The notes under the pieces were generated by a model that was not told the origin of the DNA, made no database searches, and saw only the letters and a list, made by a program, of their open reading frames with translations. From Octopus bimaculoides (Eukaryota), in NCBI RefSeq assembly GCF_001194135.2, contig NC_068993.1, positions 5,105,271 through 5,169,270 of the forward strand: a stretch of DNA of 64,000 bases, read 5' to 3'. The position numbers were made by a program, and so were the translations under genes. Positions 3,051-3,300 of this stretch are shown here, piece after piece; the stretch's first letter is position 1; each line of letters begins with the position of its first letter.

Positions 3051-3300
3051 AAGAAAGTTTACCTCTAAACTGATATTGGGTGATGATGTTTACCTGTCGG
3101 GTGATGGTGATCAATGACGCTTATCTTTAGATTGATTAAAGACAATGGTATTTACCTGTGAAGCGATATGATGTGTAATGATGTTTACCTGTTGAGCAAG
3201 ACCAGACAATGATATTTACCAGTAGAGTGCTGACGTATAATGATATTTACCTGTAAGATGATGTGAGGTAATGATATTTACCTGAGAGATGATGATGGAC
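3051..3300. repeat. 31-bp-period array: conserved 15-nt core AATGATATTTACCTG with variable 16-nt spacers
   Basis: Cores start at 3051, 3082, 3113, 3144, 3177, 3208, 3239, 3270 (periods 31,31,31,33,31,31,31). Non-coding, since the period brings a stop into each frame. Confidence 0.9.

What the first reader, a model, noticed from the sequence alone, without database searches (positions are those of the whole stretch)
3051..3300. Phased 31-bp array of conserved U1/5'-splice-site or Forkhead motifs with variable spacers
Seen: eight units at a 31-bp period (one 33). The 15-nt cores are AAGAAAGTTTACCTC, GATGATGTTTACCTG, AATGACGCTTATCTT, AATGGTATTTACCTG, AATGATGTTTACCTG, AATGATATTTACCAG, AATGATATTTACCTG, AATGATATTTACCTG. 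The spacers (e.g. TTGAGCAAGACCAGAC, TAGAGTGCTGACGTAT, TAAGATGATGTGAGGT) are far more diverged but keep their length. Known: the reverse complement CAGGTAAATAT matches 10 of 11 bases of the U1-complementary donor CAGGTAAGTAT, including +7/+8; T(A/G)TTTAC is the Forkhead consensus; 31 bp is about three helical turns. Inference: uneven conservation with fixed spacing suggests selection. Possible roles are a helically phased Fox-site enhancer, a cassette of tandem alternative or recursive (YAG/GT) donors or U1 decoys on a minus-strand transcript, or a plus-strand RNA mimicking the U1 5' end.
Basis: partly seen in the sequence, partly recalled or inferred. Interest (0 to 1): 0.75.

Follow-up and report, generated by a model that had tools for sequence, protein, structure and literature searches.

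The report
Phased 31-bp repeat with conserved core
A short stretch of non-coding, repeat-rich animal DNA holds eight head-to-tail 31-bp units whose first 16 bases stay almost identical while the rest has drifted, which looks like a row of docking sites for one DNA-binding protein, probably left by a mobile element; the proposed splice-site or Forkhead roles could not be tested.

Summary
Eight units start at 3051, 3082, 3113, 3144, 3177, 3208, 3239 and 3270, with a 31-nt period (one unit is 33 nt). This is the strongest non-microsatellite periodicity in the 64-kb window.

The core-versus-spacer contrast is statistically solid. Three independent unit pairs differ at 3 of 45 core positions and 29 of 48 spacer positions (p = 2e-8).

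I add three features:
- An inverted core copy lies at 2882-2897, next to a (CAT)8 run.
- A degenerate unit lies at 3333-3364.
- Spacers of units 1, 4 and 7 resemble each other, hinting at a 3-unit higher-order repeat.

Nothing supports a specific role. The array has no second copy in the window, no Rfam family at threshold, no tRNA, no RNA structure and no recognisable coding sequence nearby. Its spacers do not resemble U1 beyond the 11-mer.

The run finder was closed, and no genome of this organism or a relative was reachable. Transcription, copy number and orthologues therefore stayed untested.

My best reading (about 0.35) is a phased array of binding sites for one sequence-specific DNA-binding protein, most likely inherited from a mobile element. 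Known parallels are the gypsy Su(Hw) array and the Galileo/Foldback arrays. Interest is moderate to low.

The parts
3051..3081 (+). Unit 1: decayed core AAGAAAGTTTACCTC plus spacer TAAACTGATATTGGGT
   Evidence: PWM score 15.5. The core is as diverged as the spacer.
3082..3112 (+). Unit 2: core GATGATGTTTACCTG plus spacer TCGGGTGATGGTGATC
   Evidence: PWM score 23.6.
3113..3143 (+). Unit 3: decayed core AATGACGCTTATCTT plus spacer TAGATTGATTAAAGAC
   Evidence: PWM score 15.5.
3144..3176 (+). Unit 4, the only 33-nt unit: core AATGGTATTTACCTG plus an 18-nt spacer
   Evidence: PWM score 22.6.
3177..3207 (+). Unit 5: core AATGATGTTTACCTG plus spacer TTGAGCAAGACCAGAC
   Evidence: PWM score 25.2.
3208..3238 (+). 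Unit 6: core AATGATATTTACCAG plus spacer TAGAGTGCTGACGTAT
   Evidence: PWM score 21.8.
3239..3269 (+). Unit 7: core AATGATATTTACCTG plus spacer TAAGATGATGTGAGGT
   Evidence: PWM score 24.3.
3270..3300 (+). Unit 8: core AATGATATTTACCTG plus spacer AGAGATGATGATGGAC
   Evidence: PWM score 21.8.
3333..3364 (+). Degenerate further unit (CAATGACATCAACCATGAGAGAATGAAGATCA), two periods after unit 8. The stretch between (3301-3332) is broken by a G10 run.
   Evidence: Alignment to the unit consensus scores 7, p = 0.0045 against random 31-mers of the window. Also family D2.
2882..2897 (-). Single inverted core copy, AACGATGTTTACCATT on the minus strand
   Evidence: PWM score 15.1. This is the best hit outside the array on either strand of the whole window; the next best is 12.3. 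Inverted repeats I1-I3, I6, I9 and I10.
2858..2881 (-). (CAT)8, which reads as (ATG)8 directly after the inverted core on the minus strand. This is the same layout as the plus-strand units (core followed by a GAT-rich spacer), here grown into a pure microsatellite.
   Evidence: read directly from the sequence.
2929..2939 (.). C-run CCCCCCCACCG, complementary to the G-run at 3322-3332. Together the pair brackets the eight units.
   Evidence: Inverted repeat I11, 91% complementary. Its meaning is unknown.
3322..3332 (.). G-run CGGGGGGGGGG, the partner of the C-run at 2929-2939
   Evidence: I11, I12.

Best explanation
The array is a row of about nine phased copies of one 16-bp recognition sequence, AATGAT(A/G)TTTACCTGT, for a sequence-specific DNA-binding protein. 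A candidate is a multi-finger or bipartite protein that reads about 15 bp. The sites are set 31 bp apart, about three helical turns, so neighbouring sites face roughly the same side of the helix.

I think it most likely came in as part of a mobile element. In such elements, arrays of this kind serve as transposase or host-factor docking sites. The core would have been kept by selection in the active element lineage while the linkers drifted. The copy in this window would be a fragment with no proven function of its own.

Shown: the anatomy, the non-uniform conservation, the inverted extra copy, and the non-coding, repeat-rich setting.

Inferred: protein binding, helical phasing as the reason for the fixed spacing, and the mobile-element origin.
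For: Core versus spacer divergence:
- 3/45 against 29/48 differences in three independent unit pairs, p = 2e-8.
- Block-scan permutation p = 0.0012.
- Units 4-8 show core identity 0.92. Spacer identity is 0.56, close to shuffled spacers at 0.47.

Constraint on spacing:
- Spacer length is 16 nt in 7 of 8 units despite roughly 60% substitution. This argues for a constraint on spacing (inference).

Shape of the conserved block:
- It is about 16 nt of uniform strength. That fits a long recognition site better than a 7-bp Fox core.

Inverted copy:
- The best PWM hit outside the array in 128 kb of scanned strand is an inverted copy only about 150 bp upstream. It has the same core plus GAT-rich-tail layout. 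Opposed site orientation is typical of transposon ends.

Setting:
- There is no coding sequence.
- SINE-like copies lie at 1799-2167 and 3536-3926.
- Microsatellites are dense.

Precedents:
- The 340-bp gypsy insulator holds 12 Su(Hw) sites with a 12-nt core in variable AT-rich linkers. Endogenous Su(Hw) sites, in contrast, are mostly isolated (PMC2374998).
- THAP transposase sites sit in the tandem repeats of the long Galileo inverted repeats. Similar arrays occur in Foldback, Phantom, Sleeping Beauty and Bari (PMC3688188).
Against: - There is no second copy of the array or its flanks in the 64-kb window.
- No terminal inverted repeats, target-site duplication or transposase ORF were found.
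- Only one inverted site stands against eight direct ones.
- No binding protein is known, and no accessibility or binding data exist.
- Units 1 and 3 have decayed cores, so any constraint does not cover the whole array.
- A non-selective homogenising process limited to the core cannot be excluded.
Confidence: 0.35

Rival explanations
1. It is an ordinary non-functional minisatellite. A 31-bp unit, partly derived from the (ATG)n-type microsatellite common in this genome, was amplified by slippage or unequal exchange. The cores look conserved only because a non-selective process keeps them alike, for example short-tract gene conversion seeded on the core, or faster mutation of the GAT-rich linkers.
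For: - Spacers are GAT-rich and give weak BLAST matches to (ATG)n runs elsewhere in the window.
- (CAT)8 abuts the inverted copy.
- Units at the 5' edge (1 and 3) and beyond the 3' edge (3301-3364) are decayed, as expected for array edges that escape homogenisation.
- Spacers of units 1, 4 and 7 cluster at 0.67-0.69 identity, hinting at growth by 3-unit blocks.
- No gene, RNA family or structure was found.
Against: - Uniform decay is rejected at p = 2e-8.
- Slippage in GAT runs should change spacer length in steps of 3, yet 7 of 8 spacers are exactly 16 nt.
- Spacers of units 5 and 6 are not GAT-like at all.
- I know of no described conversion process confined to 16 of 31 nt (own knowledge).
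Confidence: 0.25
2. It is a host cis-regulatory element: a homotypic, helically phased cluster of transcription-factor sites evolved in place. The factor could be a Forkhead protein on T(A/G)TTTAC, possibly with a partner on the flanks. The element would act as an enhancer, silencer or insulator.
For: - T[AG]TTTAC is present in 6 of 8 units. The window holds 47 on both strands, so the array is about 30-fold enriched.
- The one freely varying core position (column 7) is A or G in all 8 units. This is the degenerate position of the Fox consensus (consensus from own knowledge).
- The 31-bp spacing is fixed.
- Conservation is non-uniform.
Against: - Conservation extends equally over AATGA and CCTGT, which a Fox monomer does not need.
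- No gene was recognised in the part of the window I could screen.
- In the one well-mapped case, dense site arrays belong to the mobile element, and host sites are isolated (PMC2374998).
- An A/G polymorphism is also the commonest neutral change.
- An AT-rich 16-mer matches several known motifs, so there is a look-elsewhere effect.
Confidence: 0.15
3. It works as RNA. A non-coding transcript carries a row of short conserved motifs that recruit or soak up a factor. On the minus strand this would be CAG|GUAAAUAU, binding U1 snRNP as a decoy, retention signal or pseudo-donor, or a near-Pumilio site GGUAAAUA. On the plus strand it would be a microRNA or RNA-binding-protein sponge.
For: - The reverse complement of units 7 and 8 matches the U1-complementary 11-mer at 10 of 11 positions. 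Units 2, 4, 5 and 6 match at 9 of 11 (my count).
- On the minus strand each CAG is preceded by the pyrimidine-leaning complement of the spacer (for example CCATCATCATCTCTCAG|GTAAAT), so it resembles a juxtaposed acceptor and donor.
- There is a precedent for short motifs kept inside fast-diverging tandem repeats of a long non-coding RNA: the hsr-omega nonamer ATAGGTAGG, which hnRNPs bind (10.1101/695486).
Against: - There is no evidence of any transcript.
- No exon or ORF was found.
- No Rfam family reached threshold.
- Fold energies are no better than shuffles, z = +1.26 and -0.76.
- 31 nt is too short for successive introns (own knowledge).
- Position +5 is A in every unit that keeps GT.
- Similarity to U1 itself ends at the 11-mer.
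Confidence: 0.1

Closest known systems
gypsy insulator of Drosophila (Su(Hw) site array in the 5' untranslated region of a retroelement)
   Same: A few hundred bp hold about a dozen copies of a 12-16-nt conserved core in variable linkers at a near-constant pitch. In gypsy this is 340 bp for 12 sites, about 28 bp each; here it is 31 bp. The gypsy array is carried by a mobile element and bound by one multi-zinc-finger protein (PMC2374998).
   Different: - The core sequence is different.
- No retroelement body, LTR or gag/pol lies next to the array here.
- Binding is untested.
- The linkers here are purine- and GAT-rich, not AT-rich.
Internally repetitive long terminal inverted repeats of Foldback-like DNA transposons (Foldback, Galileo, Phantom, Tetris)
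   Same: Short tandem repeats carry repeated transposase-binding sites; THAP sites are shown for Galileo. The motif occurs in both orientations (PMC3688188; PMC4079207). From my own memory, not checked here, Drosophila FB arms contain 31-bp repeats.
   Different: - Here eight direct sites face only one inverted site.
- There is no matching second arm, no terminal sequence and no target duplication.
- The sequence to the left is interrupted by assembly gaps at 2599-2608 and 2766-2775, so a second arm could be missing from the assembly.
hsr-omega tandem repeats with the conserved nonamer ATAGGTAGG
   Same: A short motif containing GGTA, like a splice donor, is kept in many copies while the rest of each repeat diverges quickly (10.1101/695486).
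   Different: - hsr-omega is a proven transcript with 280-bp units spanning kilobases.
- Here the units are 31 bp, the array is 250 bp long, and no transcript is known.
Classical minisatellite (VNTR)
   Same: It is a head-to-tail array of a 10-60-bp unit in non-coding DNA with decayed edge units.
   Different: Divergence is strongly partitioned within the unit and length is kept. Plain slippage and drift do not predict this.

Membership tests
Tandem or recursive 5' splice sites / U1 snRNP binding sites | Sequence complementary to the U1 5' end (CAG|GTAAGTAT), with GT at +1 and +2 | tested here: met
   On the minus strand, units 7 and 8 match at 10 of 11 positions, units 2, 4, 5 and 6 at 9 of 11, and unit 1 at 7 of 11. 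Unit 3 has lost GT. All units with GT have A instead of G at +5 (my count).
Tandem or recursive 5' splice sites / U1 snRNP binding sites | Lies in a transcribed region, with junction reads or an exon context | not testable with these tools
No ORF, exon or Pfam domain was found in the window.
Tandem or recursive 5' splice sites / U1 snRNP binding sites | Spacing compatible with splicing between successive sites | tested here: not met
   Sites are 31 nt apart, below the minimal intron length of animals (own knowledge).
U1 snRNA-derived sequence (U1 gene, pseudogene or U1-headed SINE) | Similarity to U1 beyond the first 11 nt | tested here: not met
   Spacers compared with U1 nt 12-36 give p = 0.06 (human) and 0.30 (fly). 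No U1 hit appeared in Rfam at E up to 10.
Forkhead-site homotypic cluster (enhancer) | Repeated T(A/G)TTTAC core | tested here: met
   Six of 8 units carry it. The window background is 47 on both strands in 64 kb.
Forkhead-site homotypic cluster (enhancer) | Conservation limited to, or peaking on, the Fox core; Fox occupancy or open chromatin | tested here: inconclusive
   Conservation is equally high over 16 nt, including the non-Fox flanks. Occupancy and accessibility are not testable here.
Foldback-like / long-TIR DNA transposon | Two arms of tandem repeats in inverted orientation, with terminal sequences and a target-site duplication | tested here: not met
   There is only one inverted core at 2882-2897 against eight direct ones. 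No terminal repeats or duplication were found. Assembly gaps to the left leave this open.
Foldback-like / long-TIR DNA transposon | Many dispersed copies in the genome | not testable with these tools
   The array is unique in the 64-kb window.
gypsy-type insulator array | Cluster of sites for one zinc-finger protein inside a retroelement's untranslated region | tested here: not met
   The architecture is alike, but there is no LTR or gag/pol next to it, and the core differs from the Su(Hw) consensus.
Minisatellite (VNTR) | Head-to-tail array of a 10-60-bp unit in non-coding DNA | tested here: met
Minisatellite (VNTR) | Unit-wide, roughly uniform divergence among copies | tested here: not met
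C/D-box small nucleolar RNA | Rfam model reaching its gathering score | tested here: not met
   Only sub-threshold hits appeared (for example sR9 at 3259-3314, 23.8 bits against 36). They are caused by TGATGA and CTGA in the GAT-rich spacers.

The most novel reading that the evidence does not exclude
The array is transcribed from the minus strand as part of a non-coding RNA. Its row of CAG|GUAAAUAU motifs would then act as a landing pad or decoy for U1 snRNP, serving nuclear retention, protection from premature cleavage, or titration of U1. This would be a short, phased counterpart of the hsr-omega nonamer repeats. The 16-nt linkers would be free to drift as long as the spacing is kept.
Probability: 0.06. 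Interest if true: 0.75.

Novelty: new member of a known kind. Interest (0 to 1): 0.3.

Why it matters
If the core really is a protein docking site, the array gives a ready-made 16-bp bait. It could be used to find the binding protein in an animal genome that seems very rich in repeats, and to trace an unclassified mobile-element family.

If the array proved to be single-copy, conserved across species and transcribed, it would be a rare natural array of U1-type or Forkhead-type sites with strict helical phasing.

As it stands, it is a well-documented case of partitioned conservation inside a small tandem repeat. It is not a demonstrated functional element.

Tried and rejected
Tools that were closed or found nothing:
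I did not guess run ids.
- Exact look-up of 10 window ORFs in the protein collection found none.
- A protein search with an ORF from the SINE-like repeat, meant to name the organism, found no candidate. The organism stays unverified.

Collection scans:
- A metagenome scan with RTTTACC at a 31-nt period returned more than 120 loci. None is related. The best look-alike is a 31-bp satellite in L030 with unit GTATTTACCTCATGACACAGCGYARCGGAAG. Outside the selected 7-mer it shares nothing above chance.
- Scans of bacterial genome and viral contigs with GATRTTTACC-N21-GATRTTTACC gave 9 and 1 single matches, about what chance predicts.

Literature:
- Full-text searches for the core words found only unrelated primers.
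- Searches for words from the SINE-like repeat found nothing.

Hypotheses rejected:
- Coding repeat: stops occur in all frames, and ORFs are at most 57 aa.
- tRNA or a known RNA family.
- C/D-box RNA: only sub-threshold hits.
- Structured RNA.
- U1-derived repeat.
- Part of the neighbouring SINE-like element: all of its copies start at the position equivalent to 3536.
- Further in-phase units upstream at 2958-3050: not significant.

Full report
**The observation.** Eight units start at 3051, 3082, 3113, 3144, 3177, 3208, 3239 and 3270. Each has a 15-nt core and a 16-nt spacer, except unit 4, whose spacer is 18 nt.

Tandem Repeats Finder does not list the array even at score 30, because the units are under 70% alike. 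A lag scan of my own does find it. Lag 31 at 3032-3338 is the strongest periodic signal in the 64-kb window that is not a microsatellite (0.559 identity over 220 nt). The only other hit, at 37552, is a (GATA)n run.

Six of the 11 window matches to the 15-mer at up to 3 mismatches lie in the array. The three-unit pattern RTTTACC-N24-RTTTACC-N24-RTTTACC occurs twice here and never in 100 shuffles.

**Uneven conservation.** Mean pairwise identity per column is 0.78 for columns 1-15 and 0.45 for columns 16-31. Chance level for this base composition is about 0.275. A scan over all contiguous blocks picks columns 1-16 as the best block, and only 0.12% of column permutations reach that contrast.

For units 4-8 the cores are 92% identical. 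Their spacers, even with gaps allowed, are 56% identical, against 47 +/- 8% for shuffled spacers.

Three unit pairs that share no unit (2-5, 4-7, 6-8) differ at 3 of 45 core positions and 29 of 48 spacer positions (Fisher p = 2e-8). Uniform decay of a duplicated 31-mer is therefore excluded.

Spacer length is 16 nt in 7 of 8 units despite this divergence. I read that as a constraint on spacing; this is inference.

- The best match to a weight matrix of the 16-nt core anywhere outside the array, on either strand of the whole window, is an inverted copy at 2882-2897. It reads AACGATGTTTACCATT on the minus strand and scores 15.1, against 12.3 for the next best hit.
- On the minus strand this inverted core is followed directly by (ATG)8. 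That is the same layout as the plus-strand units, a core followed by a GAT-rich spacer.
- A degenerate further unit lies at 3333-3364 (p = 0.0045). The 32 nt between it and unit 8 are broken by a G10 run.
- That G10 run is complementary to a C-run at 2929-2939.
- Spacers of units 1, 4 and 7 resemble each other more than any others do (0.67-0.69). This hints at growth in 3-unit blocks.
- Unit 1's core is as decayed as its spacer, and unit 3's core is also decayed. The conservation concerns units 2 and 4-8.
- In-phase 31-mers upstream (2958-3050) are not significantly related.

**Surroundings.** The window is AT-rich (about 32% G+C) and full of microsatellites (337 TRF rows). It contains runs of N, so it is a draft assembly.

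A roughly 390-bp interspersed repeat has copies at 1799-2167, 3536-3926 and 44259-44610, plus partial copies elsewhere. All copies begin at the position equivalent to 3536. The array, which ends 236 bp upstream, is therefore not part of that repeat.

From memory this repeat looks like an octopus SINE, but nothing I ran confirmed the organism.

The array and its flanks (about 2882-3535) have no second copy in the window.

Nothing functional was recognised nearby:
- No Rfam family reaches its gathering score in the window.
- At E up to 10, only C/D-box-like chance hits fall on the array, caused by TGATGA and CTGA.
- There are no tRNAs.
- Stops occur in all frames across the array.
- The ORFs of 45 aa or more that pass a low-complexity filter, covering roughly the first 55 kb, hit no Pfam family.
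- As RNA, neither strand folds better than shuffles (z = +1.26 and -0.76).

**What could not be tested.** I therefore have no RNA or DNA reads, no junctions, and no copy number from read depth.

No collection at hand holds this genome or its relatives:
- A metagenome scan for RTTTACC at a 31-nt period returned over 120 unrelated arrays.
- Prokaryotic genome and viral scans returned about the number of single matches expected by chance.

**The proposed motifs.** The minus strand of units 7 and 8 does match CAGGTAAGTAT at 10 of 11 positions. Units 2, 4, 5 and 6 match at 9 of 11, unit 1 at 7 of 11, and unit 3 has lost GT. Every unit has A at +5.

The plus-strand core differs from the U1 5' end by one base. 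The resemblance stops there.

T[AG]TTTAC is present in 6 of 8 units, against 47 in the whole window on both strands. Column 7 is A or G in all units, as in the Fox consensus.

The conserved block is 16 nt of even strength, which is longer than either motif needs. The same AT-rich 16-mer also nearly matches a Pumilio site, GGUAAAUA against UGUAAAUA (consensus from own knowledge). Motif look-alikes should therefore be discounted.

**Best explanation (about 0.35).** I read the array as phased binding sites for one sequence-specific DNA-binding protein, most likely inherited from a mobile element.

Selection on a 16-bp site in an active element lineage, with free linkers of fixed length, gives exactly this pattern. 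It needs no function at this particular locus.

Dense arrays of this kind are documented in mobile elements:
- The 340-bp gypsy insulator has 12 Su(Hw) sites with a 12-nt core in variable linkers, whereas host Su(Hw) sites are mostly isolated (PMC2374998).
- Transposase THAP sites sit in the tandem repeats of the long inverted repeats of Galileo. Comparable arrays occur in Foldback, Phantom, Sleeping Beauty and Bari (PMC3688188).
- Foldback-type repeats can seed satellites (PMC4079207).

The inverted extra copy and the gene-poor, repeat-rich setting fit this reading. Against it, there is no second arm, no element ends, no other copy in 64 kb, and no protein.

**Rivals.**
- A plain minisatellite whose cores are kept alike by a non-selective process (0.25). 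Decayed edge units and GAT-rich spacers fit. Kept spacer length and the sharp partition do not.
- A host regulatory cluster, Forkhead or other (0.15).
- An RNA-level motif array, either a U1 landing pad or decoy or a sponge. The hsr-omega nonamer repeats are the precedent (10.1101/695486) (0.10).
- The remaining probability is for something I have not thought of.

**Verdict.** The inference of non-neutral conservation is supported. The specific U1 and Forkhead roles are not supported and are partly disfavoured, but they are not refuted.

This looks like a new member of a known kind, a tandem array with a conserved binding core. Interest is about 0.3.

Noticed in passing
window 1799-2167, 3536-3926, 44259-44610, 31569-31733, 12190-12362, 59246-59350: An interspersed repeat of about 390 bp has several copies at 66-77% identity, each with an internal TA/TG microsatellite. 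It behaves like a SINE. From memory it resembles an abundant octopus SINE, but neither a paper search for its words nor a protein search with its ORF found anything.
   Followed up: partly
window 2599-2608, 2766-2775, about 4611-5040, about 9070-9380, about 29340-30150, and others: Runs of N (assembly gaps) occur throughout, two of them within 300 bp upstream of the array. The sequence left of 2858 may be incomplete or collapsed. This matters for judging whether a second, inverted arm exists.
   Followed up: no
window 2858-2881, 4013-4059, 4404-4456, 12088-12179, 15353-15437, 24446-24553, 47742-47929, 63476-63540: (ATG)n/(CAT)n trinucleotide runs are unusually frequent in this window. The array's spacers give weak BLAST matches to them.
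   Followed up: partly
window 42548-42760 (-): A short ORF next to an assembly gap reads ...FDATCDDFGLTINLKKTVVMYQ.... To my eye it looks like the end of a LINE reverse transcriptase. Pfam gave no hit on the 70-aa piece.
   Followed up: partly
L030 3400-5500 (metagenome contig Ga0123354_10039264); the same repeat occurs in L088: An unrelated 31-bp satellite of over 60 units runs across this stretch. Its unit, GTATTTACCTCATGACACAGCGYARCGGAAG, also contains TATTTACCT. Outside the selected 7-mer it matches the window's unit no better than chance.
   Followed up: yes
window 37680-37830: A long (GATA)n/(GACA)n microsatellite produced the only other signal (lag 36) in my periodicity scan.
   Followed up: yes
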